This document shows positions 1 to 63,504 of a DNA stretch of 64,000 nucleotides, piece by piece. The translations under genes and the position numbers were made by a program. The stretch is from IMG/VR virus record IMGVR_UViG_3300023175_000005, positions 186,001-250,000 of that record. One strand, given 5' to 3'. Under the pieces are notes generated by a model that was not told where the DNA came from, searched no databases, and worked only from the letters and a program-made list of their open reading frames with translations. Position 1 is the first letter of the stretch. Each line of letters opens with the position of its first letter.

Positions 1-2
1 TA

Positions 3-716
3 CACGGAACCAAAAGAATTGGTATGAAATTGTCAGGTGGACCTGACAGTGCAATGATTCTTTATATGATTTGTAAAAAAATAACTGATGAGAATATAGA
101 TATTGAATATATTCAACCAATTACTGCTACAGCAGATGTTAAACCATACAATATAAAATTTGCCAGAAGAGTAATTGAATGGATGCGAAATAGATATCCT
201 AATATTGAAATCAAAGATACACATTGTGCTGTATGCAGATATGAAGAATATAATTCTCGACAAGAAGAATTAGTAAGGGATTTAATTTTAAACAGAGATA
301 TTGATATTACATTTGCAGGAATTACAGCAAATCCTCCCGATGAAAAAGGCAGGAATTTTTGGCCTTGCAATCCTAAATACACTAGAGCAATTGAATTAGA
401 CTTTGACGAGCATCCTGAAGACATTTCAAATGCAGATTGGAATACAAGAGCAGTTGAAAGAGACGAACCTGATGTCGAAGTTTATTGGTCTACTTGGAGA
501 GGCAAGGACGAAAAAGTTCCAATGGTAAGACCTTTTATTAATCATGATAAAAGGAAAGTAGCAGAATTATATCATCACTACGATATTATGGAATTGTTTG
601 ATATAACAAGATCTTGTGAAAACAGAGATGGTCCTGCGCTAAACGATTTCGAAGATCATTGCGAAACAGAATGTTGGTGGTGCTATGAACGTAGATGGGC
701 CTTTGGGCGAGTTTAA
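3..716 (+). CDS. QueC-like PP-loop ATP pyrophosphatase (5'-truncated; frame is open to the window edge)
   Basis: LSGGPDS PP-loop; RPFINHDK; C-terminal TRSCE...HCETECWWCYERRWAF resembles the QueC Zn site; no in-frame stop upstream of ATG 24 (HGTKRIG-MKLSGG). Confidence 0.65.
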   Translation, partial: HGTKRIGMKLSGGPDSAMILYMICKKITDENIDIEYIQPITATADVKPYNIKFARRVIEWMRNRYPNIEIKDTHCAVCRYEEYNSRQEELVRDLILNRDIDITFAGITANPPDEKGRNFWPCNPKYTRAIELDFDEHPEDISNADWNTRAVERDEPDVEVYWSTWRGKDEKVPMVRPFINHDKRKVAELYHHYDIMELFDITRSCENRDGPALNDFEDHCETECWWCYERRWAFGRV

Positions 717-1620
717 GTATACAGGCTGGCACATTGAACTAACAAACAGATGTCCACTAGCATGTCCTGCATGTATTAGAACTATGCACGGGCCTGGTTC
801 TAAGTCAGACATTGATACTAAATTACTTCTCAACTTTTTGCCTAATCCTGAAAAATATGATTACATATTTTTTCAAGGTAATTTGGGAGATCCTATATAT
901 CATCCTGATTTCCACAAAATTTCAGAACATTTTTTCCCAGCAAATGAATTACAAGTTACAACAAATGGAATGCAAACAAAAGAGTTTTGGCAAAGAGTGC
1001 TAGAAACATGGCCCGAGTCTAGTATTGTTGAACTTAGTATAGACGGCCTACAAGACACTAATAGCATATACAGAGTTAACAGTAATTGGAACAAAATACA
1101 AGAACTTTTTGAACTTATAGCAACTACTAAACGCAAATGTCAGATTATATGGAAGTATATTGTTTTTGAACACAATCATCATCAAGTTGAAGAAGCAATA
1201 GCCTTAAGTAAAAAAATAGGCATGAATGAATTTAAAATTAAAAAAAGTTGGACTATACATGATGACATGTCCAATAATGGCCAAGTTAAAGACTATTATA
1301 ATCCAGAATGGTTTGATTATGTAAAAAGAGAAACACTTGACGAATTAGCACCTTTCTGTTATACTGGAGACATGCATTATATAAATTCGCAAGGTAACTA
1401 TTATCCTTGTTGTTGGATAGATAACGACATAAGTTCTGTAGGACACATATCAGAAGGTTTAGATAGTATTAAAGATAAATTTTTAAACTTTAGTAACTTA
1501 TTAATTTGGAGTAAATGTCCTAAAGTATGCAGAAAAATGTGTTGTAAAATTAGTGATAACGATAAAGAAATGATTACACCTAACAACGTTGTTGATAGAA
1601 AAATAATAGTAAATGATTGA
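685..1620 (+). CDS. Radical SAM protein with C-terminal twitch/SPASM-like Cys cluster
   Basis: CPLACPAC (CxxxCxxC), GNLGDP, TNG, SIDG; C-terminal PFC...YYPCC...CPKVCRKMC. Confidence 0.85.
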   Translation: MNVDGPLGEFKYTGWHIELTNRCPLACPACIRTMHGPGSKSDIDTKLLLNFLPNPEKYDYIFFQGNLGDPIYHPDFHKISEHFFPANELQVTTNGMQTKEFWQRVLETWPESSIVELSIDGLQDTNSIYRVNSNWNKIQELFELIATTKRKCQIIWKYIVFEHNHHQVEEAIALSKKIGMNEFKIKKSWTIHDDMSNNGQVKDYYNPEWFDYVKRETLDELAPFCYTGDMHYINSQGNYYPCCWIDNDISSVGHISEGLDSIKDKFLNFSNLLIWSKCPKVCRKMCCKISDNDKEMITPNNVVDRKIIVND

Positions 1621-2902
1621 ATTAGGAATTTGGAGTGGTATCGGTTTACTAACTGGTCTTTTAGCCGGGTTAGTGCCAGGTGCTGGTCCATTTGTTGCTA
1701 TTGGTGTCTTATACCCGTTTTTAGCGTCAACTAGTGCGGTTAATATTATGGCGTGTTATGTTGCTATACTCATTACCACTAACTATACTAATAGTGTTAC
1801 AGCAATCTTATACGGTATACCCGGAGATGCTACTGCAATTAGCACAGCAAGATACGGACATAAAATGTTTCAAAAAGGCGCAGGCGGCCTTGCTGTAACA
1901 AGTAACGCAATTAGTAGCACCGTTGGTGTAGCATTTGCAATGTGTTTGTTTTTAGTTGCCTTGCCTAGTATTATGCATGTATTCAAATTTTATAACAGTA
2001 TTATACAAACAATTGTAATACTAGTTGCAATATGTATGATTACATTTTTTACAAAACAGAATAAACTTTTGACATTATTACTGTTTTGTTTTGGAGGATT
2101 AATATCACATCAAGGAATTGATCCGATTACATTTGATCAGTTTCTTGTTTTTAACAATTTTTATCTTAGTTTAGGAATACCTTTTGCAAGTGTAATGATT
2201 GGATTGTATCTGTTTCCTGAGATACTAAAAATTCATAACATTTCTATTTCCCAACCTAGCAAGATAAGTAAGTATGCAATAGGAAAAGGCACATTTGGTC
2301 CAAGCCTGTTAGGTAGCTTTATTGGATTTTGGTGCGGTCTTATTCCTGGCATAACGAATATTCTTGGTAGTTATGCTAGTGCAGGCATTGTAAAACGCTT
2401 TTTTAAAAAGCCTGTACTTAAAAGCATTGCTGCCGCAGAGGCTGCTAACAATAGTGGAGCATTATCCAGTTTGTTGCCTTTGCTAATCCTTGCTATACCT
2501 ATTACGGGTAGTGAAGTAATTGTGTACTACTTGATGTTAGAAAGTGGTTATCAATTTAATATAGAAAACACAGTAGACAAACTGTCTTCTATACTTTACT
2601 TTATACCGGTAGTGACATTAATATGTTTACTTTTAAGTTGGTATGGTTTTAACCTGTTAGGTCAAATAGTGTATCTTTATAAACAATATAGAGTATATGC
2701 AAATACGTTGATCCTAACTACTATAAGTGTAATAAGTGTCGTTATCTTTCCTATACACGAATGGATGGTAGCATGTATACTGATTGCAATGGTACTAGGA
2801 TATTTTCTACGAAATTACGATACGAGCCCAGTCATTTATGGATATTTCCTTAGTGACTTGTTCTATGAAAGTTTTGTAAGGACTGTTATAATATTATCTT
2901 AG
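1613..2902 (+). CDS. tctA: Tripartite tricarboxylate transporter large membrane subunit, TctA family
   Basis: Polytopic hydrophobic protein with GLVPG, YGIPGDATA, GLIPG and AAAEAANNSGA motifs typical of TctA. Confidence 0.8.
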   Translation: MIELGIWSGIGLLTGLLAGLVPGAGPFVAIGVLYPFLASTSAVNIMACYVAILITTNYTNSVTAILYGIPGDATAISTARYGHKMFQKGAGGLAVTSNAISSTVGVAFAMCLFLVALPSIMHVFKFYNSIIQTIVILVAICMITFFTKQNKLLTLLLFCFGGLISHQGIDPITFDQFLVFNNFYLSLGIPFASVMIGLYLFPEILKIHNISISQPSKISKYAIGKGTFGPSLLGSFIGFWCGLIPGITNILGSYASAGIVKRFFKKPVLKSIAAAEAANNSGALSSLLPLLILAIPITGSEVIVYYLMLESGYQFNIENTVDKLSSILYFIPVVTLICLLLSWYGFNLLGQIVYLYKQYRVYANTLILTTISVISVVIFPIHEWMVACILIAMVLGYFLRNYDTSPVIYGYFLSDLFYESFVRTVIILS

Positions 2903-2910
2903 GAGAAAAA

Positions 2911-3678
2911 ATGAAAAAATTTATCACAGCACTAACAGCAATGTTTATTGCAACATCTGCAAACGCAGAAATTTTAATTGTAAATCCAGGTTCAGAAGAG
3001 GGTGCTTTTAGACAAGTATTGACTGAAATTGGAAACAAAATTGATCATCAATTTGTACAGGCAAATAATCCTGTAACAGCATCAACCTATTTAGCAAAAG
3101 GCAATGCACTTACTATTTGGAGTAGTGAATGGCCTGGAGATCCTAAAATGCCATCAGTAGAAGTAAGTGAAGACACACTTGTTGCTCTAATGACATATGA
3201 AACTATGATGTGTAGTAGAGAATTTACAACACTAGAAGATCTTAACGGACAGGAAGTAAAGATTGCAACATGGGGTAGCGCACCAGTAGCGAAATTCTTA
3301 GGAAACTTAGAACAAGCAACAGGAGCAACATTTACAGTTGTACCATTTGGTGGTAGTGGTAGTACAACAAAAGGTTATCTTGCAGGTGATGCAGATACAG
3401 TGTTTACTATTACAACTAGACAAACTGCTATCGAAGAAGATGCAAACACAACATGTTTTGCATTTAGTGAAACAGGCGATCTAGGTTTCCGTTTTGTTGA
3501 TGCAATCAACACAGTTTGGCTAGACAACAACACTACAACAGAACTTCGTGCAATTGTTGGTAATTTGTCTATGACACCAGAATGGCAAGATAAGTTTTCA
3601 GGCACAAAAACTTATATTGGCGGAACACCAACAAATGTTGCTATGTTTGAAGAAGCGGTAGAAAACTTCTCACAATGA
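2911..3678 (+). CDS. TctC/Bug-like periplasmic substrate-binding protein
   Basis: Sec signal ending ANA; VPFGGSGSTTKGYLAGDAD resembles the TctC VPYxGGxxA...GxxD motif; follows tctA with SD AGGAG. Confidence 0.7.
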   Translation: MKKFITALTAMFIATSANAEILIVNPGSEEGAFRQVLTEIGNKIDHQFVQANNPVTASTYLAKGNALTIWSSEWPGDPKMPSVEVSEDTLVALMTYETMMCSREFTTLEDLNGQEVKIATWGSAPVAKFLGNLEQATGATFTVVPFGGSGSTTKGYLAGDADTVFTITTRQTAIEEDANTTCFAFSETGDLGFRFVDAINTVWLDNNTTTELRAIVGNLSMTPEWQDKFSGTKTYIGGTPTNVAMFEEAVENFSQ

Positions 3679-4196
3679 ACTTCGAAATTAGACGCCTTTA
3701 TGTAGATAATCTACCTAGTCAGATATATGACTTTATGCAGTCGTGTGCTGAACAAGGATTAGAAAACAATGTTTCAAAGGTGTCTATGAAGTTTGGTAAA
3801 TGGAAAGATGAAGCGTGGTGGTGTACTTGGGTTGACAATAAAATTGTTAGCATAAGCGGCTGCCACGCTTTTGACGATTATATACCAGATAGTTACAGAG
3901 TTTGTTTGCGCACTGCAACACTTAAAGAATACAGAGGAAAAGCACCAGGAAGTATAAAAAAGATGCATAATGATTTTAATTGGGGTCATATACTTCCTTA
4001 TCAAATTGAGTATGCTAAAAGCAAAGGTGCTAAAAGAATAGTTTTTACAACAAATAGTGAAGTTGACAAAAGTCCAAACAGTTTTAGGACCAACAGGGTT
4101 GTTGAAAAAGTTTTCATTCCGCAAGGATTGTGTAGACTTGTTGAAAAAGATGCAGAAGTCTTCTATACGAAGCAAAATATTTGGGAAGTGATATGA
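3675..4196 (+). CDS. GNAT-fold acetyltransferase-like protein
   Basis: RTATLKEYRG motif A-like segment; ATGA coupling on both sides. Confidence 0.5.
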   Translation: MNFEIRRLYVDNLPSQIYDFMQSCAEQGLENNVSKVSMKFGKWKDEAWWCTWVDNKIVSISGCHAFDDYIPDSYRVCLRTATLKEYRGKAPGSIKKMHNDFNWGHILPYQIEYAKSKGAKRIVFTTNSEVDKSPNSFRTNRVVEKVFIPQGLCRLVEKDAEVFYTKQNIWEVI

Positions 4197-4834
4197 ACGA
4201 ACAATTGATTGCAATGCAAAGATTAGCCATGATGGGAGATTGGTTAGAATTAGATGTTTTTCATCATGATAATCTTATGAAAGAAATTGAACCATTCAAA
4301 GATGATTGGAAACCATACAATACTAGAAAACCTAACAATAGATGGGGATTAAGTGTTACTAGTTTAGATGGTGGTTTGAGCGGCATTCCTGACTTAGACA
4401 GTCTTTCAGAATACAATAAAAAATATAATACTAATATTACCAATCATGACATAGACAAGCCTACACCTGTATATGAGGCTAGTCCTACATTGCAAAGCAT
4501 TTTAGAACCTTTTAAACCATGGCTAGGACGCTGTCATTTTTTAAAATTAGATGAAGGTGGCTTTTTTCCTGAACACTATGATATTAATAAAACAACATAT
4601 GATTACGATGAAATAAGATTGATTGGTTTTGTTCATAACTGTAATAAACATTTTTTAAAATTTGTTTATGAAGATACAATACCACAGTATGATGATAGTA
4701 ATTTATTCTACTTCAATGCTAATAAAAGACACACTGTTTTTAGCACAGTTGATGATTGTATTATGCTTGTTGTTTGTTTAAAATTTGATACAGGATGTTA
4801 TAAAGCTTTACTTGACCAATATATTTGCTCGTAG
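4193..4834 (+). CDS. 2OG-Fe(II) oxygenase, aspartyl/asparaginyl beta-hydroxylase-like
   Basis: FLKLDEGGFFPEHYD (HxD) and distal His in NKRHTVFS; start moved to ATG 4193 (ATGA overlap). Confidence 0.7.
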   Translation: MNEQLIAMQRLAMMGDWLELDVFHHDNLMKEIEPFKDDWKPYNTRKPNNRWGLSVTSLDGGLSGIPDLDSLSEYNKKYNTNITNHDIDKPTPVYEASPTLQSILEPFKPWLGRCHFLKLDEGGFFPEHYDINKTTYDYDEIRLIGFVHNCNKHFLKFVYEDTIPQYDDSNLFYFNANKRHTVFSTVDDCIMLVVCLKFDTGCYKALLDQYICS

Positions 4835-6127
4835 TTTATTGTTTACTGAATTATAATTATCAAATAATTCTTTTTCATTTGTTCCTGTAATATCTAAATT
4901 TACATTAAAATTTTTATCTTGTAAATTTTGAAATGCAGGAATGCGTATGCCTGTCTTTATTTCAGTGTTTTGTTTATTTAGATATGGTGTAATATTTTCT
5001 AAATTTTTTACTTCTTTAATTTTTCCAGGTTGTAATACAGCACATCCCCATAATAGTCTTTTTTGTAAATTTATTTCTTTTCCTTGCAACATATTACTAA
5101 TAATTTTGCCATCGTTCATTCTGTCTAAAATGTTAACAAATTGTCCTGGTCTTGGATTAAAGTCAATAGCAACCTTTCTACCATTGTTAAAATGAAAGTC
5201 AGGACCTGCAAAAAACATATCTTTGATTGCAAGTTTATCTACAATAGTTTGCAAGAAGAATTGACATAATCCTGGAAAATCTGTAGGAACTTCATCTGCG
5301 GTTACAATCCATACTGCACGTTCTCTAACAATATCACTTTTTTTACTTTTACTATGACTTTCTATTGGATTGCTATTATGATCTAATTCGTCGCCATATT
5401 TTATCTTACTATTTTTTACATAGAATGCAATGTTTACTTTTCCATCTTTTACATATCCGTAAGGACTAATACTAGGTTCTTCGCTCCAAATATATTCTTG
5501 AAACATAATTTTACACGGTTTAAAATTAAAACGTTGTGTATGTATACCTTGTCTGTTAAGATCAAAAAATTCATTGTGTATATTCTTAGATTTAATATGA
5601 TCTAAGAAATGATGCATGTTATTCCATCTTCTATATTCTATTACAGGATTGCTTGCATCGTCACCTGGATAAAAGACGTTACTTCCTGTACCAATGTCTG
5701 GTTTACTAAACATTTCTTTGTTTTTAAATGCTTTTAGTTGGTTGTAAAATGTAGGAGTAATACTTTTTGGTACTAGTACATCCATACCAACTTGTCTACA
5801 AAAGTCATCAAACTTCTGTTTGTTGCTCAATATTTCTGCTGCAAATGCACTTATATTTTTAATGCCGTAAAATGATTCTAGTTGTGCTTGAATAGGAAGT
5901 AAGTTTTCGCTAATAGTATAAATTCTGTCTACACAACTGAAACGTTTTGTAATTTCAAGAATGTCAAACCCTTTACAAATAAACACTTCTTGTGGTAGAT
6001 CTATAAAATGTTCATGATCTGGTGCAGGTTCAAAATCAGTTACAATACTACAATTTTTTCTTAATGCTGTAACAAGGCCTTCGCATTTGTTTAAACTTCG
6101 TTCATGTGCTATTATTAGTGTTTTCAT
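4808..6127 (-). CDS. ATP-grasp fold ligase
   Basis: NKQKFDDFC, KPDIGTGS, FQEYI, IDFNPRPG motifs. Confidence 0.7.
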   Translation of the reverse strand: MKTLIIAHERSLNKCEGLVTALRKNCSIVTDFEPAPDHEHFIDLPQEVFICKGFDILEITKRFSCVDRIYTISENLLPIQAQLESFYGIKNISAFAAEILSNKQKFDDFCRQVGMDVLVPKSITPTFYNQLKAFKNKEMFSKPDIGTGSNVFYPGDDASNPVIEYRRWNNMHHFLDHIKSKNIHNEFFDLNRQGIHTQRFNFKPCKIMFQEYIWSEEPSISPYGYVKDGKVNIAFYVKNSKIKYGDELDHNSNPIESHSKSKKSDIVRERAVWIVTADEVPTDFPGLCQFFLQTIVDKLAIKDMFFAGPDFHFNNGRKVAIDFNPRPGQFVNILDRMNDGKIISNMLQGKEINLQKRLLWGCAVLQPGKIKEVKNLENITPYLNKQNTEIKTGIRIPAFQNLQDKNFNVNLDITGTNEKELFDNYNSVNNKLRANILVK

Positions 6128-10007: not shown

Positions 10008-10289
10008 CTAGTTTCTATATTTTAAAAGTGGACAAGCAAGTGCAAAATAACTTAGTTCTTTTGATTCTTCAAACGCTATTTTAACTTTACTTGCTAACGG
10101 TTGTTCTGCTTCATAAACAACTTCTTTATCGATATAATATCTTCCTTTAAGATTTGTTTGCACCCATTCTTCTAGTGCCTTTTGAATATTATATTTTTGG
10201 GGAATAACCATACATTCCCAATAGGGTGGACAAAAATCCACCCGTCTAATATCAAAAACGTTTAAAGGGTTAATTTTGATTTTATCCAT
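10008..10289 (-). CDS. Hypothetical protein
   Basis: 93 aa, overlaps the VWA gene stop. Confidence 0.6.
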   Translation of the reverse strand: MDKIKINPLNVFDIRRVDFCPPYWECMVIPQKYNIQKALEEWVQTNLKGRYYIDKEVVYEAEQPLASKVKIAFEESKELSYFALACPLLKYRN

Positions 10290-11601
10290 TTAATTCTTCG
10301 TAATGTGCAGTAAGACCAAATGGTGCTTCTAGTCCTTTATCATGGTGTCCATGGATAATAAAAATAGTATCACAGTAATCTGGATCACCCCAGCTACCGA
10401 AAGGATAGCCATCTGTAAACATAATAAACTTCTTAGGCGTAATATCGTTTGCTTTCATGTAGGTCCAGTTAGCATCAAAGTCAGTGCCACCGCCTCCCAT
10501 AACTTCGTAGTCGGTGAGACTTTCGCCGCAATCGGCACTAAAATCTTGTTCATTGTATACTTTAGTATCAAAGCACCACAATTTAATATTGTAATCTTTG
10601 AATTGGTCCATAATGCCTTGTACTTCGCTTAGAAAAATGTTTGCTTGTTCGTTTCCAATGGAGCCTGACATGTCAACACCAATACAAACATCAATAGTTT
10701 CTTGAAAGTTCATGCCTGGCAAAATAACACCAGTATGCCAGCCTTTGCGTGAAGGACGCATAAATGTAAAATCATTTTTTACGGTGCTTTGGATTTGCTG
10801 ACGGATGATTTCACCCCAGTTCATTTTAGGCTCAGTAAGGTCTTTAATAATTCTTGCAATTTCGCCCGGAGTGTTACCAGCGCCTGCGGCATTTGCTGCT
10901 GAAATCATGCTCTCTTTGATTTCGTCACGAATTTGTTTCATTTCTTCTTTTGAATATTTAGGTGCTTTACCCTTACCTTCGCCTTCTTCGTCTCCGTCAT
11001 CTCCTTCTAAATCAAGGTGTTCGTCTAGCATCTCTCCTAATTGTTTTAGGAATTCTTGGCCTTGTTTTTCAAACTCTGGAAACAGATCATCGTATACTTC
11101 TTCCGAAGTCCACCCTTCGTATTTAAAGTCTTGAAAACAATCAACGATGCTGGGTTTAACACCAATACGATCGCGAACAAGTAAATTGTTAACAATATAA
11201 TCTGCTGAAATATTATAAAGCATAGGATGACGATCATCTCTACGACCTAAGTGATCAAATACACAGTGTAGAATTTCGTGTGCAATTACAAACTCAATTT
11301 CTTTATTATCCATTGCATTAAAGAATTGAGTGTTAAAATACAAATTACGACCATCTACAGCGGCAGTCGGAATCCAGTCGTCAGCAGCAACAATTTTAAG
11401 ACGTGTTGCCATATTACCAAAAAATGGATGACGGAGTAGCAAACCTACTCGTGCAACAATGATACGATCTAATACTTCTTCACGCATCACAGAAAGAGCA
11501 TCTTCTGTAATATCTAGATCAGGTTGCCAATTTTTAAGTTTACTTGCAGTCTTGTCTGTAGACATTTGCATTGCAACGTATTGCGGTAAAAAATCTAACA
11601 T
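10282..11601 (-). CDS. DUF2201-type metallopeptidase plus VWA domain protein
   Basis: AHEILH zincin motif; DMSGS MIDAS, GGGGTDF, TDG. Confidence 0.85.
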   Translation of the reverse strand: MLDFLPQYVAMQMSTDKTASKLKNWQPDLDITEDALSVMREEVLDRIIVARVGLLLRHPFFGNMATRLKIVAADDWIPTAAVDGRNLYFNTQFFNAMDNKEIEFVIAHEILHCVFDHLGRRDDRHPMLYNISADYIVNNLLVRDRIGVKPSIVDCFQDFKYEGWTSEEVYDDLFPEFEKQGQEFLKQLGEMLDEHLDLEGDDGDEEGEGKGKAPKYSKEEMKQIRDEIKESMISAANAAGAGNTPGEIARIIKDLTEPKMNWGEIIRQQIQSTVKNDFTFMRPSRKGWHTGVILPGMNFQETIDVCIGVDMSGSIGNEQANIFLSEVQGIMDQFKDYNIKLWCFDTKVYNEQDFSADCGESLTDYEVMGGGGTDFDANWTYMKANDITPKKFIMFTDGYPFGSWGDPDYCDTIFIIHGHHDKGLEAPFGLTAHYEELNG

Positions 11602-11631
11602 GTCATTCCTCTTATATCAGTGCCTATATTT

Positions 11632-11659
11632 AATATAACATATTTAAGTTTTTTGTCAA
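11632..11659 (-). promoter_or_regulatory. Sigma70-type promoter with embedded late element
   Basis: TTGACA-N16-TATATT (TG-extended); TAAATA at 11641-11646. Confidence 0.65.
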
Positions 11660-11665
11660 CCATTA

Positions 11666-11702
11666 AAAAGAAAAAATGGGCAGAGTATATACCCTGCCCA
11701 TT
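11666..11702 (-). terminator. Rho-independent terminator after the MoxR gene
   Basis: AATGGGCAG/CTGCCCATT stem followed by a T-rich tract on the minus strand. Confidence 0.8.
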
Positions 11703-11714
11703 CCTGTGGCACAC

Positions 11715-12803
11715 TTACTGTTGTGCTGCCTTAATATACTTTCCATAACGATCATGGAACTCATCAAAACACTCAACAGCATCTGGATCGATTGGAAGAC
11801 TGTATTGAGTAAGAGCAAGTTTGATACCCATAACAACCAATTCCGTATCGAAATTATCCATTGCAAAACGCAAAAAGTTATTCACCTTAGCATCAAACTT
11901 TTTATCATTTTTTGCATCTGCATCTTGAAGTTCGTAACAAAGTGAAACAGTCAAGGAATACATGGCACTGATTTCTTTTGTGTTCAACTCTTTTACTTTA
12001 CCATCTAAGATGTCTGATGGATTTGGCATACTCGATGCAACTTTACGGTGTGCCATAAACTTAACAGCAAGTCCTTCGCCAACCGAACCCGCTACAAGAT
12101 CTGTAATAACTTCTTGATCATCTTCATCGTCAAGCAATTCGCTCACAAACGTCCATGTTCGTGGTGTTGCAAACGAACGACTTGGACTACGAGGATCAAA
12201 GTCAAACAAATCTTTTTTTGCAAACTGAAGATAACCAACTACATCTTTGTGTATCTTGTTAGCAACAGCCCACTCAAACCAGTCATTGAAATCAACAGCC
12301 AGTTCCAAGTGTACAAAACGGTTAGCAAGCGGAGCAGGCATGCGGTAAGTAACACCTTTGTCTGCTTCGCGGTTACCAGCCGCAATGATTACTACATTGT
12401 CAGGTAGTACATATGTACCAACCTTACGGTTAAGAATAAGTTGATATGCAGCCGCTTGTACAGCAGGTGCCGCTGAGTTCAACTCATCTAAAAACAAATA
12501 AATTGTCGAGAATTTTTTAGCAAATTCTTCGCTTGGAAGTTCTACAGGAGGAGCCCATTTCATTGTGTTATCATTTGCACTGTAGTAGGGCATACCTTTG
12601 ATATCTGTAGGTTCCCAAAGTGACAAACGAACGTCAATGAGATATGAATTAGGTGTTGAAGTTTGAATCTGTTCAACAATTTCGGATTTACCAATACCTG
12701 GAGGCCCCCACAGGAAGATTGGACGTTTTTTAGCAATTGCTCGCTGAATTCGTGATTTAGCCTTGTTAGGGCTTACAGTACGTGTAATTTCTGCAACACT
12801 CAT
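11715..12803 (-). CDS. MoxR-like AAA+ ATPase
   Basis: Walker A GPPGIGKS, Walker B LFLDE, AAGN sensor, LANRF arginine finger. Confidence 0.85.
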   Translation of the reverse strand: MSVAEITRTVSPNKAKSRIQRAIAKKRPIFLWGPPGIGKSEIVEQIQTSTPNSYLIDVRLSLWEPTDIKGMPYYSANDNTMKWAPPVELPSEEFAKKFSTIYLFLDELNSAAPAVQAAAYQLILNRKVGTYVLPDNVVIIAAGNREADKGVTYRMPAPLANRFVHLELAVDFNDWFEWAVANKIHKDVVGYLQFAKKDLFDFDPRSPSRSFATPRTWTFVSELLDDEDDQEVITDLVAGSVGEGLAVKFMAHRKVASSMPNPSDILDGKVKELNTKEISAMYSLTVSLCYELQDADAKNDKKFDAKVNNFLRFAMDNFDTELVVMGIKLALTQYSLPIDPDAVECFDEFHDRYGKYIKAAQQ

Positions 12804-18972: not shown

Positions 18973-19001
18973 AATATAACACACAAACACCCAAATGTCA
19001 A
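18973..19001 (-). promoter_or_regulatory. Sigma70-type promoter
   Basis: TTGACA-N17-TATATT. Confidence 0.75.
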
Positions 19002-20233
19002 TCTTTTAAAAAACCAAATTCAGGATAAAGATCTAAGAATTTTGTTGCTCTTGTACTGTCAAAATAATCCAACATGTATCTAAAATAATCACGTTGTTTA
19101 TCTGATAAAGTTTTTTGTGGCTCCGTTTTAATCCAATCTAACCAGTTGTAGTCGTCTATTAGGTTTAAAGTTTTTAACTCTGGTAAGAAAGTTTCAATTT
19201 TTTTTACAATTTCAATTCTGTAATCAATGGGTGAGTTGGCAAAATGTAATGGCTCTGGCCAATCTAAAAATGTTGTATTAAAAGGAAACTTATTTTGTTT
19301 AATAAAGTCAAGCAAATTTGGCAAATCTTTTAGATTTAGCAATTGTATTGTAGGCTCTAAGGTAATTTGAAAATTCTCATATTGGTCGCATATTTTTTTA
19401 GATCTTAAAATCTTGCTTTCCAATGCAGACCAAGAACTAGGGTATCGAACATATTCTAAAACTTTTCCAGTAGCATCCAAACTTATTGATAAGTTTACAT
19501 GCTTAAACTTTGTAAGGTATTTTTCTATCCATGATTCTTTGATAATTGTGCCATTTGAAATTATGTGTACCTTTATATGACCGCTTTCTTTTCTATTCAC
19601 TAATTCTTCTATCAAAGATGTAAATCCCTTCATCACAAACGGCTCGCCGCCGACTGCCATAATCTCTTGAGTTCTTTTTGCATTTTCAAGTATATGGTCA
19701 ACAAATCGCTGGTTGAAATTATTAGATGATGTAGAAAGAACTTCTAGGTCTTTACTATTGGTATAAGGATTGCTTTTGCCGAATTTATTATATTCTAGCA
19801 TGTTCTTTGCAATTTGATTGCTCAATGTAGGGTTACACATCACGCACTGCAAGTTACATTCGTTGCTCATTCTCAAATCAAAACTCAGAGGACTAGGAAC
19901 AACTGTATGGGCATTTTTATAATAATAATCGGCTAATGATTTCCATTTATGATTTTCATACTGTCGGTTTGAAATGATTCCCTGTTCTTCACTTTCAATA
20001 CAACTTTTACAGATATTTTTAGGGATGATTCTTTGATTGAATTTGTGTCTTAATTTTTGTAAAGTCTTGCTGTTCCATACTTCATCGACATCCTTGCCTA
20101 GAATATTAATATCGTCTGAATCTAATTGTTTTGCATAACAACAGGCTTTCATATGCCCTGTTGTTGTCACAAACATTTTAACAAAAGGATGGACACAAAA
20201 ATTTTTGTATAAATCTTCTATTTCATTCGTCAT
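18998..20233 (-). CDS. Radical SAM protein with N-terminal twitch/SPASM domain
   Basis: CVHPF...KACC...CKSC; CNLQCVMC; GGEP; SNGT; SLDA. Confidence 0.85.
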   Translation of the reverse strand: MTNEIEDLYKNFCVHPFVKMFVTTTGHMKACCYAKQLDSDDINILGKDVDEVWNSKTLQKLRHKFNQRIIPKNICKSCIESEEQGIISNRQYENHKWKSLADYYYKNAHTVVPSPLSFDLRMSNECNLQCVMCNPTLSNQIAKNMLEYNKFGKSNPYTNSKDLEVLSTSSNNFNQRFVDHILENAKRTQEIMAVGGEPFVMKGFTSLIEELVNRKESGHIKVHIISNGTIIKESWIEKYLTKFKHVNLSISLDATGKVLEYVRYPSSWSALESKILRSKKICDQYENFQITLEPTIQLLNLKDLPNLLDFIKQNKFPFNTTFLDWPEPLHFANSPIDYRIEIVKKIETFLPELKTLNLIDDYNWLDWIKTEPQKTLSDKQRDYFRYMLDYFDSTRATKFLDLYPEFGFLKD

Positions 20234-46638: not shown

Positions 46639-47337
46639 CTATTTATCTAGATCGTGTTTGTAAATTAGTTTATCGATCCTTGAAATATTACCACCTGCAA
46701 GTAGTTCAAACAATGTAAGTGCTTTGTCGTTCTTAATATAAACGTATTGCCCTTTTATCCAGTTTTTGTTTTTTATTTTTTGTAACAGTTTAGTGCCGCA
46801 TTTGCATAAATTAGGATTTTTTACAATCCAATTAGCCATTTCAGGATTAACATTCTTGCCACCAAATGTAACTTTATAATCAAACTCTGTTTCTTTGTTA
46901 ACAATAATTACATTTTTATTATTTTGCAAATATTCTATCATATCAGGACTCGGCTTCCAAACTTTAATGTAGTCTGCTGATAAAGTATTGGCTAATTTGT
47001 CTATCAAACTCTCGTTGTTTGAATAAATGTTTAAGAAACTTTGCTCTATTCTAACAGTATAGTCTGTTTCATGCATTAGATTGGTAATGATTCTTTCGAC
47101 ATCTAATATCTCATTAGTATCAATAGAAATATGTGAGTGACCAAATCTTGCGTTTACTTGAAATGTTTTACTTCCAGGAAAAATTCTTGCTTTAAATGAA
47201 TTAAGTTCTCGTCTTGCGTACTGAAAGTTTTTCCCGTGCTGTATTTCAGTACGCAATATATGTGCTATATAAAGTCTTGTTTCTAATTTATATAGATATT
47301 TGTTATAATGTAGTTTTGTAGTCTCAGCTTGTTGCAA
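46639..47337 (-). CDS. Hypothetical protein
   Basis: 232 aa, coupled to clpA. Confidence 0.6.
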   Translation of the reverse strand: MQQAETTKLHYNKYLYKLETRLYIAHILRTEIQHGKNFQYARRELNSFKARIFPGSKTFQVNARFGHSHISIDTNEILDVERIITNLMHETDYTVRIEQSFLNIYSNNESLIDKLANTLSADYIKVWKPSPDMIEYLQNNKNVIIVNKETEFDYKVTFGGKNVNPEMANWIVKNPNLCKCGTKLLQKIKNKNWIKGQYVYIKNDKALTLFELLAGGNISRIDKLIYKHDLDK

Positions 47338-49573
47338 TTACAGTACTCTCAACATTTAAGACGATGTCTTTGCCTTTTGCGTTGATTGATAGTTTACCAC
47401 CGTCTTTCAAATCACCAAACAATAGCATTCTTGACAAAGGACGTTTAATATCTTTGTCAATAACACGCTGTAATGGTCTTGCACCCATTTTACGATCAAA
47501 GCCTTTGTCTACTAACAAATCTAATGCTTCGTCTGTAACAGAAACTTCTACGTTTTTATCCGCAACTTGATCTTTAAGTTCTTTTAAGAACTTGCCAACA
47601 ATTTTTAACATCACAGGCTTACCAAGTTTAGCAAACGTAATAACGCCATCTAGCCTATTTCTAAACTCTGGTGCAAAGAATTTTTTCAATTCGCCATCTT
47701 CGTAGTCAGAACCGTCTGATTCTTCACCAAATCCGATAGCATTTTTCTCTGCTTCTCTTGCACCAAGATTTGTTGTTAGGATTAGGATACTGTTACGTGC
47801 ATCTGCTTCCTTACCGTTGCTGCCAGTGATCATACCGTTGTCCATAAGTTGCAATAAAACATTACTTACATCTGGGTGTGCTTTTTCAATTTCATCTAGC
47901 AACAACACACAGTTGGGATTTTCTTGCAGTTTGATAATCAACTGTCCTGCATCGTCTTCAAATCCTACATAACCTGGAGGTGCACCGATAAACTTTGCAA
48001 CACTATGCTTCTCTTGATATTCACTCATATCAAATCGTACAAGTTGTACACCTAAATGATGTGCAAGTTGTTTTGCTGTTTCTGTTTTACCTGTACCTGT
48101 CGGACCCATAAACACAAATGATCCAATCGGTTTATCTTCTGGTTTAAGTCCTGCTTGCGAAACAAGTATTTTATCAACAATACCTTCGATTGCTTCGTCT
48201 TGACCGTAAACACTACCTTTCATATTAGTTTCTAAATTAGCAAGATTTTCTGTCTCACGTTCTGCAACTTGCTCTTTTGGTATTTTAACCATTTTTGCAA
48301 GTTCAAATTGAATACTTTCTTCTGTGACAATTTTATTTTCTGTCTGATTATTGACCTTGAACCTACTACATGCAACATCAATAACATCAATTGCTTTGTC
48401 AGGTAGTTTTTTATCTGCTTGATATTTGATTGTAAGTTTTACTGCTGCTTCAATTGCTTCATCTGTAATTTCTACAGTATGAAATTCTTCATAATATTTC
48501 TTAATACCATGTAAAATATCTTTTGTAATTTCTGCACTCGGCTCGTCAACAGTTACACGCTGGAATCTTCTCATAAGCGCACGATCTGATTCGAAGTACT
48601 TGCGGTACTCTTCCCAAGTAGTTGAAGCAACAACTTTGATATTACCTTTAGACAATGCAGGTTTTAACATATTTGCTAAATCATTTGCACTATTACTTCC
48701 ACCTGCGCCAGCGCCACTAATCATGTGTGCTTCGTCAATAAACATAATAGTTTTGCCTTTTTTCTGTAGTGCAGATAACACAAGTTTAAAGCGTTCTTCA
48801 AAGTCGCCGCGGTATTTTGAACCTGCAAGCATACTGCCGATATCAAGTGCATAAACATTGTATTCTTTTAAAAACTCTGGAACATCGTTGTTTACAATTT
48901 TCCATGCTAAACCTTCAGCAATAGCAGTTTTACCCACACCTGGATCGCCGACCATAAGCACATTTGATTTTGTGCGGCGTCCTAGTGCAAGTGCTAGTGA
49001 TTCTATTTCGTCTTCCCGTCCGATAACAGGATCTATACGACCTTTTTTAACATCGGCATTGAGATCGTCAGTAAATGCTTTTAATGCTTTGTTAGCAATA
49101 CCAGCATTTTCCATGTCTTCGTCTGCTACTATATCTAATTCAAGTTCTGCACTCATATATTGGATAAACTTATCTTTCTGAATGCCTGCTTGTTGACATG
49201 CAAAGAACGCATAACTTCTTTTTTCGCTTAATGTACTAATAAAAACATCAGTAATTTCGATTTGATTGCGTCCTTGAAATAATACTTGTGCAAAAGCTCG
49301 ATTTAAAACCCGCTCAACAGTGCCTGTCTTAACAGGTTTATATTTTTTTGCTTCTGTTTTAATTTCGTTTAATTTTGTTTTGAGATAATTTTCTACATTC
49401 TTTTTCAATAGGTCTACATCTGTATCAAACCCTTTTAATGCTGTAGAAAATTGTTCTTCACACAGCATTGCAAACAGAAGATGTTCAAGAGTAACATATT
49501 CATGCTGTAATTTCTTTGCGTCTTTAACTGCCTTATCAAATACTACTTGTAATGCTTGGCTAGGTTCTACCAT
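47324..49573 (-). CDS. clpA: ATP-dependent Clp protease ATP-binding subunit
   Basis: N-domain EHLL; GDPGVGKT; FIDEAH; GPTGTGKT; LLLDEIEKAH; IGF ClpP-docking loop; GARPL. Confidence 0.93.
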   Translation of the reverse strand: MVEPSQALQVVFDKAVKDAKKLQHEYVTLEHLLFAMLCEEQFSTALKGFDTDVDLLKKNVENYLKTKLNEIKTEAKKYKPVKTGTVERVLNRAFAQVLFQGRNQIEITDVFISTLSEKRSYAFFACQQAGIQKDKFIQYMSAELELDIVADEDMENAGIANKALKAFTDDLNADVKKGRIDPVIGREDEIESLALALGRRTKSNVLMVGDPGVGKTAIAEGLAWKIVNNDVPEFLKEYNVYALDIGSMLAGSKYRGDFEERFKLVLSALQKKGKTIMFIDEAHMISGAGAGGSNSANDLANMLKPALSKGNIKVVASTTWEEYRKYFESDRALMRRFQRVTVDEPSAEITKDILHGIKKYYEEFHTVEITDEAIEAAVKLTIKYQADKKLPDKAIDVIDVACSRFKVNNQTENKIVTEESIQFELAKMVKIPKEQVAERETENLANLETNMKGSVYGQDEAIEGIVDKILVSQAGLKPEDKPIGSFVFMGPTGTGKTETAKQLAHHLGVQLVRFDMSEYQEKHSVAKFIGAPPGYVGFEDDAGQLIIKLQENPNCVLLLDEIEKAHPDVSNVLLQLMDNGMITGSNGKEADARNSILILTTNLGAREAEKNAIGFGEESDGSDYEDGELKKFFAPEFRNRLDGVITFAKLGKPVMLKIVGKFLKELKDQVADKNVEVSVTDEALDLLVDKGFDRKMGARPLQRVIDKDIKRPLSRMLLFGDLKDGGKLSINAKGKDIVLNVESTVIATS

Positions 49574-62820: not shown

Positions 62821-63504
62821 TTATTCTCTATTACCTAATAGTGCTAATAAGAATTGGAACAAGTTCACAAAGTCAAGATATAAACTCAATGCCATTTGGA
62901 CACCATATTTGTCTGCAACTTCCATATTAGGAGCAGAAAGAAATAAATTTTTTGCTGTTTGCGTATCCCATGCTGTCATACCGACAAAAATTAGTACACC
63001 GATAATACTAATTGCAAATGCAAATGCTGAACTTGCTAGAAAGATGTTTACAATACTAGCAATAATAATGCCAATTAATCCTACAATAAGAAAACTACCC
63101 ATTGCGGTTAGATCACGTTTAGTTGTATATCCATATAAACTTGCTGCTGCAAATGTTGCACTTGTAATAAAAAATACCTGTGCAATACTTGTCATTGTAT
63201 ATACAACAAATATTGTACTCATACTAATTCCCATTACTGCTGTAAATGCGTAATAGAATCTTGTGATGCCTTGTAGTGTCCAATTGCCGCCTGCAAAACT
63301 ATAATATAAAATCATACCTAGCGGCGCAAACATAACCACAAGACCTAATAATCCAGTTGGAATAAATCCTGTTGTGTAACATAGATATGCAACAAATCCA
63401 CTTACTGCTAATCCTAGAGCAGTGTGATTGTACATATTAATCATAAATTTACGCAAGCCTTCATCATAAGCTCGACTTGCAACATTAGCAGTTCTTGCTA
63501 CCAT
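62821..63504 (-). CDS. Bax inhibitor-1/YccA family membrane protein
   Basis: Seven TM segments; YGYTTKRDL, AWDTQ, ALSLYLDFVNLF. Confidence 0.9.
   Translation of the reverse strand: MVARTANVASRAYDEGLRKFMINMYNHTALGLAVSGFVAYLCYTTGFIPTGLLGLVVMFAPLGMILYYSFAGGNWTLQGITRFYYAFTAVMGISMSTIFVVYTMTSIAQVFFITSATFAAASLYGYTTKRDLTAMGSFLIVGLIGIIIASIVNIFLASSAFAFAISIIGVLIFVGMTAWDTQTAKNLFLSAPNMEVADKYGVQMALSLYLDFVNLFQFLLALLGNRE

What the first reader, a model, noticed from the sequence alone, without database searches (positions are those of the whole stretch)
1613..3678. Virus-encoded tripartite tricarboxylate transporter lacking TctB
Seen: TctA-like permease directly followed by a signal-peptide-bearing TctC-like binding protein, with no small 4-TM gene between or beside them. 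Established: cellular TTTs are normally TctABC. Inference: a minimal two-component importer of an organic acid (for example 2-oxoglutarate for the adjacent oxygenase), which is unusual as a phage auxiliary gene.
Basis: partly seen in the sequence, partly recalled or inferred. Interest (0 to 1): 0.65.

Follow-up and report, generated by a model that had tools for sequence, protein, structure and literature searches.

The report
Phage two-part tricarboxylate-type transporter module
A large marine (salt-marsh) phage carries its own membrane permease of the TctA family plus a secreted binding protein with the TctC fold but no TctB subunit. The pair always travels with an ATP-grasp-like ligase and an oxygenase-like enzyme, so the phage probably imports a small acid to feed its own chemistry.

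Summary
ORF 1613..2902 is a full TctA permease (Pfam PF01970, 195 bits) with both signature repeats. ORF 2911..3678 is a signal-peptide protein with no Pfam hit, but its confident model is closest to TctC/Bug binding proteins (Z 17.7, against 11.9 or less for other binding-protein classes).

No TctB was found by HMM (E up to 10) in the 256-kb virus record or in five related records, two of them complete. A hydrophobicity scan that finds TctB beside 14 of 16 cellular tctA genes finds none here.

The locus is not at a contig end and is not host DNA. It lies 187 kb into a jumbo-phage record, and 79 IMG/VR contigs carry the same compact TctA (420-431 aa, 29% or less identical to cellular TctA).

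In every contig with enough flank, TctA co-occurs with the binding protein, an ATP-grasp-like protein (4808..6127, minus strand) and a cupin with an H-x-D...H motif (4193..4834). Both transporter genes are under strong purifying selection (dN/dS 0.03 and 0.07) and appear in salt-marsh metatranscriptome assemblies.

Most likely this is a virus-specific, TctB-less variant of the tripartite tricarboxylate transporter that imports a carboxylate-type precursor. The substrate is unknown. 2-oxoglutarate is possible but untested. Viral tctA hits have been mentioned twice before, without analysis.

The parts
1613..2902 (+). tctA-like permease, 429 aa (P0001). A compact viral type that contains only the Pfam core of TctA.
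   Evidence: PF01970 at E 2e-57, 195 bits, profile 3-418/423. Motifs GLLTGLLAGLVPGAG (residues 11-25) and GSFIGFWCGLIPGIT (234-248). About 11 hydrophobic segments. AF2 pLDDT 79, all-helical. dN/dS 0.033 against L010. Only 26% identical to a canonical 519-aa TctA.
2911..3678 (+). Secreted solute-binding protein of TctC/Bug fold, 255 aa (P0002). Signal peptide is residues 1-19.
   Evidence: No Pfam or NCBIfam hit. AF2 pLDDT 91.7. The top 13 Foldseek hits are all TTT binding proteins. VIA Z 17.7 to TctC 4x9t (238 aa aligned, 3.2 A), against 11.9 or less for other classes. Weak profile hit to TphC over the second pincer loop, E 0.13. dN/dS 0.072. Two invariant Cys.
2900..2904 (+). Shine-Dalgarno AGGAG for the binding-protein gene, overlapping the tctA stop codon.
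   Evidence: Sequence read directly...tcttAGGAGaaaaaATG.
4193..4834 (+). Cupin-type, 2OG/Fe(II) Asp/Asn-beta-hydroxylase-like protein (P0006). The ORF opens at TTG 4181; ATG 4193 is the likelier start.
   Evidence: Invariant H132-x-D134...H184 in 10 homologs. The homolog L021:3652-4302 gives weak Cupin_2 and Asp_Arg_Hydrox hits. An Atlas cluster has PF05118 in 25% of members, and the Atlas record starts at residue 5. Profile hits to PDB 'Beta-hydroxylase' at E 0.11-0.2. Co-occurs with tctA where the flank allows.
4808..6127 (-). ATP-grasp-like protein, 439 aa, convergent on the operon.
   Evidence: No Pfam hit. Atlas feature hits at 0.96 to several ATP-grasp_4 clusters, with 10 of 10 family-bearing hits in one clan. 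Weak alignment of its D-F-N-P-R block to the E-x-N-P-R block of carbamoyl-phosphate synthetase. Homologous (E 2e-57) to the gene that directly follows tctA in the second viral clade. Present in all 79 loci with enough flank.
3675..4196 (+). 173-aa soluble ORF (P0005). It has a weak acetyltransferase (GNAT) hit only and is an accessory part of the operon.
   Evidence: PF00583 at E 0.097, below cutoff. Homologs in 13 related loci. Covered by the same RNA-library contigs as the binding-protein gene.
685..1620 (+). Radical-SAM (SPASM-like) enzyme, 311 aa (P0003). Its stop overlaps the tctA start.
   Evidence: PF04055 at E 1.4e-5; TIGR04317 at E 3e-15, below cutoff. The overlap is visible.
1..716 (+). 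PP-loop ATPase (QueC-like, P0004). The gene starts 27 nt before the window.
   Evidence: PF06508 at 22.4 bits (cutoff 22), with weak NAD_synthase and PP-loop hits. Gene coordinates.

Best explanation

Proposed sequence of events during infection:
1. The plus-strand operon is expressed.
2. The 255-aa protein is exported by Sec and its signal peptide is cut after A-N-A.
3. It folds in the periplasm as a two-lobed, TctC-type binding protein, probably with one disulfide.
4. It captures a small anionic, carboxylate-bearing metabolite.
5. It delivers that metabolite to the compact TctA permease, which moves it into the cell, presumably by cation symport as assumed for the family.
6. The imported compound feeds phage enzymes that always accompany the pair: an ATP-grasp-like ligase and a cupin/2OG-Fe(II)-type hydroxylase. 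In this phage there is also a large set of radical-SAM, B12-radical-SAM and SAM methyltransferases.

The small TctB subunit is not encoded and is probably dispensable for this compact TctA, as proposed for stand-alone archaeal TctA.

Shown: gene identities, fold, absence of TctB, co-conservation, purifying selection, and presence in RNA libraries.
Inferred: direction of transport, docking, substrate class, and independence from TctB.
For: - TctA identity and both signature repeats.
- TctC fold of the partner, well separated from other binding-protein classes.
- Sec-type signal peptide and two conserved Cys in all 30 relatives.
- Tight operon with a Shine-Dalgarno site.
- tctA and the binding-protein gene are linked in all 79 IMG/VR loci with enough flank, in two different gene orders. 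That argues for function rather than shared ancestry of one arrangement.
- The ATP-grasp-like and cupin genes are co-conserved.
- dN/dS is 0.033 for tctA and 0.072 for the binding protein.
- Contigs 100% identical to the window span tctA's 3' half, the binding-protein gene and the next ORF in 4 salt-marsh metatranscriptome runs. The convergent gene is barely covered.
- Complex prediction gave ipSAE 0.42 against a best control of 0.01. The tool rates this 'weak support'. Its calibration: the mark was reached by 58 of 80 solved complexes and 2 of 110 mismatches, but at 0.60 or under by only 7 of those 80 solved complexes and by both mismatches that passed. The runs agree in at least 55% of contacts and the partner's pLDDT is at least 79.
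- No TctB by HMM or TM scan, with positive controls.
- The literature reports archaea with TctA alone and a proposal that TctA is the core carrier (PMC5812351, PMC5898192).
Against: - The binding protein fails Pfam TctC. It replaces the TctC loop signature P-F-x-A-G-G-x-x-D with N-P-G-S-E-E-G, so carboxylate binding is not assured.
- hhalign against two canonical TctC sequences is not significant.
- In the analogous TRAP systems the small subunit is essential (PMC5812351), so a TctB-less pair might not work alone.
- The complex score is only 'weak support'.
- RNA-library contigs cannot prove transcription.
- This record is about 72% complete.
- The substrate and the direction of transport are untested.
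Confidence: 0.55

Rival explanations
1. Hybrid system. The phage supplies TctA and the binding protein but borrows the host's TctB (or a host TctAB scaffold). This would parallel cyanophage PstS, which is thought to work with host PstCAB (my own knowledge).
For: - Small subunits are essential in TRAP systems, and all characterised TTT systems have TctB (PMC5812351).
- The likely hosts are Gram-negative Proteobacteria, judged from the DNA polymerase relatives.
- 54 of 401 sampled Pseudomonadota genomes have TctA.
- A low-GC MAG in which two such phage contigs were binned carries three canonical TctA genes; the two operons examined also have TctB and TctC, and the third is a long (675-688 aa) TctA frame that may be a TctB-TctA fusion.
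Against: - The viral TctA is 29% or less identical to cellular TctA, and it lacks their roughly 28 N-terminal and their extra C-terminal residues. An interface with a host TctB is therefore not obviously kept.
- The module occurs in several divergent phage lineages that probably have different hosts.
- The host is unknown.
Confidence: 0.2
2. Not an importer of a nutrient. TctA would export or flip a product of the phage's ATP-grasp/oxygenase/radical-SAM pathway (a modified peptide or small molecule). The periplasmic protein would then receive, chaperone or sense that product.
For: - The four-gene core always sits inside variable sets of tailoring enzymes that resemble biosynthetic clusters. 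These include B12-radical-SAM C-methyltransferases, SPASM radical-SAM enzymes, methyltransferases, and in the other clade an aminotransferase, a carbamoyltransferase and nitroreductase-like proteins.
- The TctC carboxylate signature is absent from the binding protein.
Against: - All characterised TTT systems, and binding-protein-dependent secondary carriers generally, are importers (PMC5812351).
- No precursor peptide, protease or export ABC gene was seen in the operon.
- A conserved ligand-cleft-type pattern of invariant residues fits a capture protein.
Confidence: 0.12
3. Host-derived passenger DNA, an assembly chimera, or a decaying remnant with no function.
For: Viral 'auxiliary' genes are often mis-binned host DNA.
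Against: - The locus is 187 kb into a 256.6-kb record and its GC content equals that of the flanks.
- Phage genes lie on both sides.
- The same module lies on 79 viral contigs.
- Only one cellular assembly out of 185,579 species genomes has it, on contigs that share other phage genes.
- Purifying selection is strong.
- Identical sequence occurs in 20 runs.
Confidence: 0.02

Closest known systems
Bacterial tripartite tricarboxylate transporters TctCBA/BctCBA (TC 2.A.80)
   Same: A TctA-family permease with the duplicated G-x3-G-x3-G-x2-P-G motif and the A-E-A-N-N block. A secreted two-lobed binding protein of the same fold is encoded next to it.
   Different: No TctB. The TctA is 429 aa against about 500-550 aa, and is 29% or less identical. 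The binding protein is about 236 aa when mature, against about 300. It fails PF03401 and has N-P-G-S-E-E-G in place of P-F-x-A-G-G-x-x-D. It is encoded by phages and is linked to ATP-grasp-like and cupin genes rather than to a TctDE regulator.
Stand-alone archaeal TctA (arCOG04469 / COG1784)
   Same: TctA without TctB. It has been proposed to act as the core carrier on its own (PMC5898192, PMC5812351).
   Different: Those mostly have no binding protein either, whereas here one is always present. I could not fetch archaeal sequences to test relatedness.
TRAP transporters (DctPQM)
   Same: A binding-protein-dependent secondary carrier. The TctA model shows weak fold similarity to TRAP M subunits and DASS carriers (Z 4.8-6.8, not significant for helical proteins).
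   Different: There is no sequence relation. The Q subunit is essential in TRAP systems (PMC5812351).
Viral tctA hits reported in passing
   Same: tctA was listed as a putative auxiliary gene on SUP05-associated viral contigs ('protein domain hit only', role unknown; PMC4164917). A 'tricarboxylate transport' gene was noted on a marine myovirus scaffold (PMC8115048).
   Different: Neither paper describes a paired binding protein, the lack of TctB, or the conserved four-gene module. I did not test whether those contigs belong to this family.
Cyanophage PstS (phage-encoded phosphate-binding protein)
   Same: A phage-encoded periplasmic binding protein used to boost uptake during infection (my own knowledge, not tested here).
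   Different: PstS is an ABC-system binding protein and relies on the host permease. Here the phage also brings the permease.

Membership tests
Tripartite tricarboxylate transporter (TTT, TC 2.A.80) | Large permease of the TctA family (Pfam PF01970 above the gathering score) | tested here: met
   195.1 bits against a cutoff of 28.9, profile 3-418/423. Confirmed on the six-frame genome search.
Tripartite tricarboxylate transporter (TTT, TC 2.A.80) | Duplicated motif G-Hy3-G-Hy3-G-Hy2-P-G-Hy-G in TM1 and TM7 (Winnen 2003, as cited in PMC5812351) | tested here: met
   Residues 11-25 are GLLTGLLAGLVPGAG. Residues 234-248 are GSFIGFWCGLIPGIT, with T in place of the last G. The G and P positions are invariant in 30 viral homologs.
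Tripartite tricarboxylate transporter (TTT, TC 2.A.80) | Small 4-5 TM subunit TctB encoded with TctA | tested here: not met
   PF07331 gave no hit at E<=10 in this record or in 5 related records, two of them complete. The HMM finds TctB in control operons. The TM scan finds an abutting 143-219 aa, 4-6 TM ORF in 14 of 16 cellular loci and in 0 of 79 viral loci. Caveats: TctB is poorly conserved, and this record is about 72% complete.
Tripartite tricarboxylate transporter (TTT, TC 2.A.80) | Periplasmic binding protein of the TctC/Bug family by sequence (Pfam PF03401) | tested here: not met
   No hit at E<=0.1 and none at E<=10 on the genome. hhalign to two canonical TctC sequences is not significant. 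The only weak sign is TphC at E 0.13. Second-tier relatives give sub-threshold TctC and Phosphonate-bd hits.
Tripartite tricarboxylate transporter (TTT, TC 2.A.80) | Binding protein with the TctC/Bug fold (two-lobed, cluster E-II) | tested here: met
   Model pLDDT 91.7. The top 13 Foldseek hits are all TTT binding proteins, best E 1.2e-10. Z values are 17.7, 16.3, 16.2 and 15.1 to TctC, TphC, TBP and Bug27, against 11.9 or less for the other classes.
Tripartite tricarboxylate transporter (TTT, TC 2.A.80) | TctC loop signature P-F-x-A-G-G-x-x-D between beta1 and alpha1, which holds the ligand's carboxylate through two waters (PMC5812351) | tested here: not met
   The loop after beta1 (residues 25-31) is N-P-G-S-E-E-G. 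N25 and G31 are invariant in the family.
Tripartite tricarboxylate transporter (TTT, TC 2.A.80) | Binding protein docks on TctA | tested here: inconclusive
   ipSAE 0.42 (three runs: 0.37-0.43) against a best control of 0.01. The tool's verdict is 'weak support'.
Tripartite tricarboxylate transporter (TTT, TC 2.A.80) | Uptake of a carboxylate driven by an ion gradient | not testable with these tools
   This needs uptake assays and ligand binding.
Phage auxiliary gene (virus-encoded, not host contamination) | Lies inside a bona fide virus genome, flanked by viral genes, and is conserved among related viruses | tested here: met
   The IMG/VR record and its internal position. DNA polymerase 41-50% identical to jumbo phages. 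A tail-fibre domain. 79 viral loci. Only mis-binned phage contigs among 185,579 species genomes.
ATP-grasp ligases (for ORF 4808..6127, minus strand) | ATP-grasp fold and nucleotide-binding motifs | tested here: inconclusive
   No Pfam hit. Atlas feature similarity of 0.96 to ATP-grasp_4 clusters. Only a weak motif-level alignment to carbamoyl-phosphate synthetase.
2OG/Fe(II) oxygenases of the Asp/Asn beta-hydroxylase type (for ORF 4193..4834) | H-x-D/E...H iron triad on a cupin fold; Pfam PF05118 | tested here: inconclusive
   The triad-like H132-x-D134...H184 is invariant. The Pfam, PDB and Atlas signals are all below threshold.

The most novel reading that the evidence does not exclude
A self-sufficient, virus-specific minimal transporter. 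A compact TctA plus a shortened TctC-fold binding protein would work without any small subunit. It would be the dedicated intake of a conserved phage pathway (ATP-grasp ligase, 2OG-type hydroxylase and variable radical-SAM, B12 and methyltransferase tailoring) that builds a so-far unknown metabolite or modification during infection. If so, TctB is dispensable for the TTT mechanism, and large marine phages run import-fed biosynthesis.
Probability: 0.3. Interest if true: 0.8.

Novelty: new variant of a known kind. Interest (0 to 1): 0.6.

Why it matters
Phage auxiliary uptake genes known so far are mostly single binding proteins that plug into host transporters. Here the phage brings both a membrane permease and its own binding protein.

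The role of TctB, and whether TctA can act as a carrier without it, has been open since the family was described (PMC5812351). A naturally TctB-less pair that depends on a binding protein and is under strong selection gives a small, clonable system to test this.

The constant link to an ATP-grasp-like ligase and a hydroxylase-like enzyme, inside clusters rich in radical-SAM and B12 enzymes, suggests that large marine and salt-marsh phages carry out import-fed chemistry that has not been described.

Tried and rejected
- GenBank phages hold no true homolog of either protein. The four TctA hits are bacterial-type fragments.
- PHROGs gave nothing for TctA, the binding protein, the cupin or the ATP-grasp-like protein.
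- NCBIfam gave nothing for TctA or the binding protein.
- The TctA profile has no sequence match in the PDB. The TctA model has no Foldseek match at E<=1e-3. The wide structural search gave only middling scores: barley YS1 at Z 10.7, DASS, ArsB and TRAP-M at Z 4.8-6.8. These are below what is trustworthy for helical proteins.
- hhalign of the binding-protein family against two canonical TctC sequences was not significant.
- Complex prediction of TctA with the binding protein gave only 'weak support' (0.42 against 0.01). I do not count it as evidence of binding beyond that.
- The promoter and terminator scan was not above chance (41 found against 35 expected).
- There are no tRNAs in the window.
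- I first thought that the 421-aa TctA clade lacked the binding protein. This was wrong. The gene lies convergent, just beyond the ATP-grasp-like gene, and was cut off on those short contigs.
- I considered the DUF6580 membrane protein, found next to tctA in 12 of 79 relatives, as a TctB substitute. It is not TctB by Pfam, is absent from this record and from most relatives, and has no PDB match.
- I considered cobalamin import for the B12-radical-SAM enzymes. Nothing supports it: the binding protein has a small TctC-type fold.
- I checked whether the upstream H-x-D...H proteins (g166, g167) are paralogs of the cupin. hhalign does not support this.
- No code other than table 11 was used.
Full report
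**Where the window lies.** The window is bases 186,001-250,000 of a 256,558-bp linear IMG/VR virus record that CheckV rates about 72% complete. The finding therefore sits about 187 kb into the contig, not at an end. GC content is 0.34-0.35 across the locus and the rest of the window. The same window encodes:
- a family-B DNA polymerase (phrog_262, E 8e-193) whose best relatives are jumbo myoviruses of Proteobacteria (Sinorhizobium phage Phosso 50%, Agrobacterium Atu_ph07 45%, Vibrio 2.275.O 44%, GAP32/121Q about 41%);
- an Mtd_N tail-fibre-like protein and a MoxR/VWA pair.

The stretch occurs at full identity in at least 11 salt-marsh DNA runs and in six salt-marsh metatranscriptome runs. This is a real phage and not a host chimera.

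**The two genes.**
- ORF 1613..2902 (429 aa) matches Pfam TctA over the whole profile (195 bits).
- It carries the family's duplicated motif at residues 11-25 and 234-248, plus the conserved G-I-P-G-D-A and A-A-E-A-A-N-N-S-G blocks. All of these are invariant in 30 viral homologs.
- It is a compact form. Cellular TctA in 400 sampled Pseudomonadota genomes are 497-708 aa and at most 29% identical. Against a canonical 519-aa TctA it lacks about 28 N-terminal residues and the extra C-terminal residues.
- ORF 2911..3678 (255 aa) follows after 8 nt, behind an AGGAG site.
- It has a Sec-type signal peptide ending A-N-A. Like its 29 aligned relatives, it has two conserved Cys in the mature part, 80-81 residues apart. 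These are the only Cys apart from a third in the signal peptide of two members. This fits a periplasmic disulfide (inference).
- It has no Pfam, NCBIfam or PHROG hit.

**Is the second protein TctC-like?**
- By sequence, barely. The family profile finds one PDB chain, the TTT binding protein TphC, at E 0.13. The alignment covers V-V-P-Y-x-G-S-G-S against V-I-P-Y-K-G-T-A-P, which is the second 'pincer' loop.
- By fold, yes. The AlphaFold model built on 30 sequences has pLDDT 91.7.
- The first 13 Foldseek matches are all TTT binding proteins (Bug27, BugE, TphC, TctC 4x9t, AdpC, TBP, BugD, MatC).
- VIA-align gives Z 17.7 (238 residues, 3.2 A) to TctC 4x9t, 16.3 to TphC, 16.2 to TBP and 15.1 to Bug27. 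Sulfonate, phosphite, amino-acid and other binding proteins reach 11.9 or less.
- The TctC loop signature P-F-x-A-G-G-x-x-D (PMC5812351) is replaced by N25-P-G-S-E-E-G31.
- The invariant residues N25, Q50, W70, S72, E73, W74, T98, C101, S102, R103, W121, G122, P145, G148-S149-G150, D160 and D197 fall at the C-terminal ends of the predicted strands. That is where ligands sit in this fold (the placement is my inference, as I had no coordinates).

I therefore call it a TctC-fold binding protein, not a member of Pfam TctC.

The exhaustive HMMER search found only 71 proteins at E<=1e-3 among 1.84 billion representatives. These are about five full-length clusters of the family itself, some fragments, and a second tier of unannotated 271-302 aa proteins. 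Members of that tier give sub-threshold TctC and Phosphonate-bd hits.

**TctB.**
- PF07331 finds nothing at E<=10 in this record.
- It also finds nothing in five related virus records, including two that CheckV rates 100% complete (170.8 and 165.7 kb).
- The HMM does find TctB in two canonical operons (E 3e-22 and 6e-10).
- Because TctB is poorly conserved (PMC5812351), I also ran a Kyte-Doolittle scan. In 14 of 16 cellular tctA loci it finds a 143-219 aa ORF with 4-6 hydrophobic segments abutting tctA. One further locus has a fused 675-aa gene, and one gave no call.
- In 79 viral loci nothing abuts tctA, and 59 loci have no small ORF with three or more TM segments within 6 kb.
- On this record TctA is the only polytopic protein near the operon. 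The other multi-TM ORFs are under 100 aa or are a BI-1 homolog 60 kb away.
- In 12 of the 79 relatives a DUF6580 membrane protein lies upstream of tctA. This record has no homolog of it.

**The module.**
- The binding-protein family was found on 34 IMG/VR loci. Among 185,579 species genomes it was found on only one assembly. That assembly's two relevant contigs share further genes with these phages and are best read as mis-binned phage DNA.
- Searching with TctA gave 79 viral loci.
- In every one with enough flank there is also a binding-protein homolog and a homolog of ORF 4808..6127, and in those whose flank reaches far enough a homolog of ORF 4193..4834.
- Two gene orders exist. In the window's clade the order is tctA > binding protein > ... 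< ORF 4808..6127. In a second clade (TctA 421 aa, about 52% identical) the order is cupin > tctA > ATP-grasp-like > < binding protein. Linkage that survives rearrangement argues for a functional unit.
- ORF 4808..6127 has no Pfam hit, but it resembles ATP-grasp_4 clusters in the Atlas feature search (0.96; all ten family-bearing hits in one clan). It aligns weakly to the E-x-N-P-R block of carbamoyl-phosphate synthetase.
- ORF 4193..4834 has an invariant H-x-D...H and weak Asp/Asn beta-hydroxylase signals from three sources.
- Around this core the enzymes vary. Here there are at least seven radical-SAM genes upstream, including two KedN5-like B12-dependent C-methyltransferases, two SAM methyltransferases and a PP-loop ATPase. 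In the other clade there are an aminotransferase, a carbamoyltransferase and nitroreductase-like proteins.

**Function and expression.**
- Against a 92-98% identical relative, dN/dS is 0.033 for tctA and 0.072 for the binding-protein gene.
- In four metatranscriptome runs the longest identical contigs all cover the 3' part of tctA, the binding-protein gene and the next ORF (for example 1988-4096, 2101-3817, 2256-3831). The stretch 4800-6000 is almost empty.
- This uneven pattern repeats across runs and looks like RNA rather than carried-over DNA. Contigs cannot prove it, however.
- The complex prediction passed its mark only weakly (0.42 against 0.01).

**Interpretation.** The best reading is a virus-specific, TctB-less variant of the TTT system that imports a small carboxylate-type metabolite for the co-conserved ligase and hydroxylase.

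That TctA can be the core carrier without TctB has been proposed from archaeal genomes (PMC5812351, PMC5898192). That the small subunit is essential in TRAP systems is the main counter-argument, and it keeps alive the rival in which a host TctB is borrowed.

The ATP-grasp-like partner suggests instead that the cargo is a building block.

An export or other role cannot be excluded.

**Prior knowledge.** tctA was listed as a putative auxiliary gene of unknown role on SUP05-associated viral contigs (PMC4164917; repeated in the review PMC6359870). A 'tricarboxylate transport' gene was noted beside norB/nirK on a marine myovirus scaffold (PMC8115048). I found no description of the paired binding protein, the missing TctB or the four-gene module. 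The library does not cover all journals.

**Limits.**
- No coordinates of the models were available, so the pocket residues are inferred from secondary structure.
- Archaeal TctA could not be fetched for a rooted tree.
- The host is unknown.

Noticed in passing
window 62821-63504 (-): A 227-aa Bax-inhibitor-1/YccA-family membrane protein encoded by the phage (Pfam PF01027, E 3e-51).
   Followed up: no
G000 genome 172381-185953 (L002:6381-19953) and window 685-1620, 18998-20233: An unusual pile-up of at least eight radical-SAM genes on one phage. Two are KedN5-like B12-dependent C-methyltransferases and several have SPASM domains. There are also two SAM methyltransferases and a PP-loop ATPase. 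It looks like a biosynthetic or modification island. The product is unknown.
   Followed up: partly
L021:7975-8490 (and 11 other related loci, e.g. L019:6587-6976): A DUF6580 membrane protein (129-172 aa, Pfam E 9e-42) sits upstream of tctA in 12 of 79 related phage loci. In L021 a 61-aa lipobox ORF follows it. It is absent from this record. It may be an accessory membrane partner or a separate small transporter.
   Followed up: partly
L044-L048, L063, L107-L150: A second viral TctA clade (about 421 aa) keeps the same four genes in another order. It sits in a different enzyme set: DegT-type aminotransferase, radical SAM, carbamoyltransferase, nitroreductase-like proteins and a methyltransferase.
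   Followed up: partly
L157:1-1443, L158:1-1467: More distant relatives of the binding protein (283-287 aa, E 2e-10 to 5e-9) lie on short marine contigs. Each sits behind a hydrophobic ORF whose C-terminus resembles that of TctA. In L158 the gene is followed by a PP-loop (S-G-G-K-D-S) ORF. This may be a further branch of the module.
   Followed up: partly
L002:12087-12761 and L002:12761-13297: Two conserved small proteins of the cassette (225 and 179 aa) each have an invariant H-x-D...H pattern like the cupin at 4193-4834. Profile comparison does not show homology and there are no PDB or Pfam hits.
   Followed up: partly
window 47324-49573 (-), 10282-12803 (-): A ClpB-like ATP-dependent protease (phrog_4871, E 2e-246), and a MoxR-type AAA protein paired with a DUF2201 metallopeptidase/VWA protein.
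   Followed up: no
G000 genome 113692-128112 (+), 65375-75478 (-), 75585-82571 (-): Three giant ORFs of 4806, 3367 and 2328 aa elsewhere on the record.
   Followed up: no
G006 (L063, L066, L064, L065): A MAG labelled Rhodobacteraceae has about 35% GC in all four stretches read. It holds two phage-like contigs with the module besides three canonical TctA genes (two confirmed tctCBA-type operons with TctB and TctC). The label or the binning looks doubtful. Alternatively this could hint at the host.
   Followed up: partly
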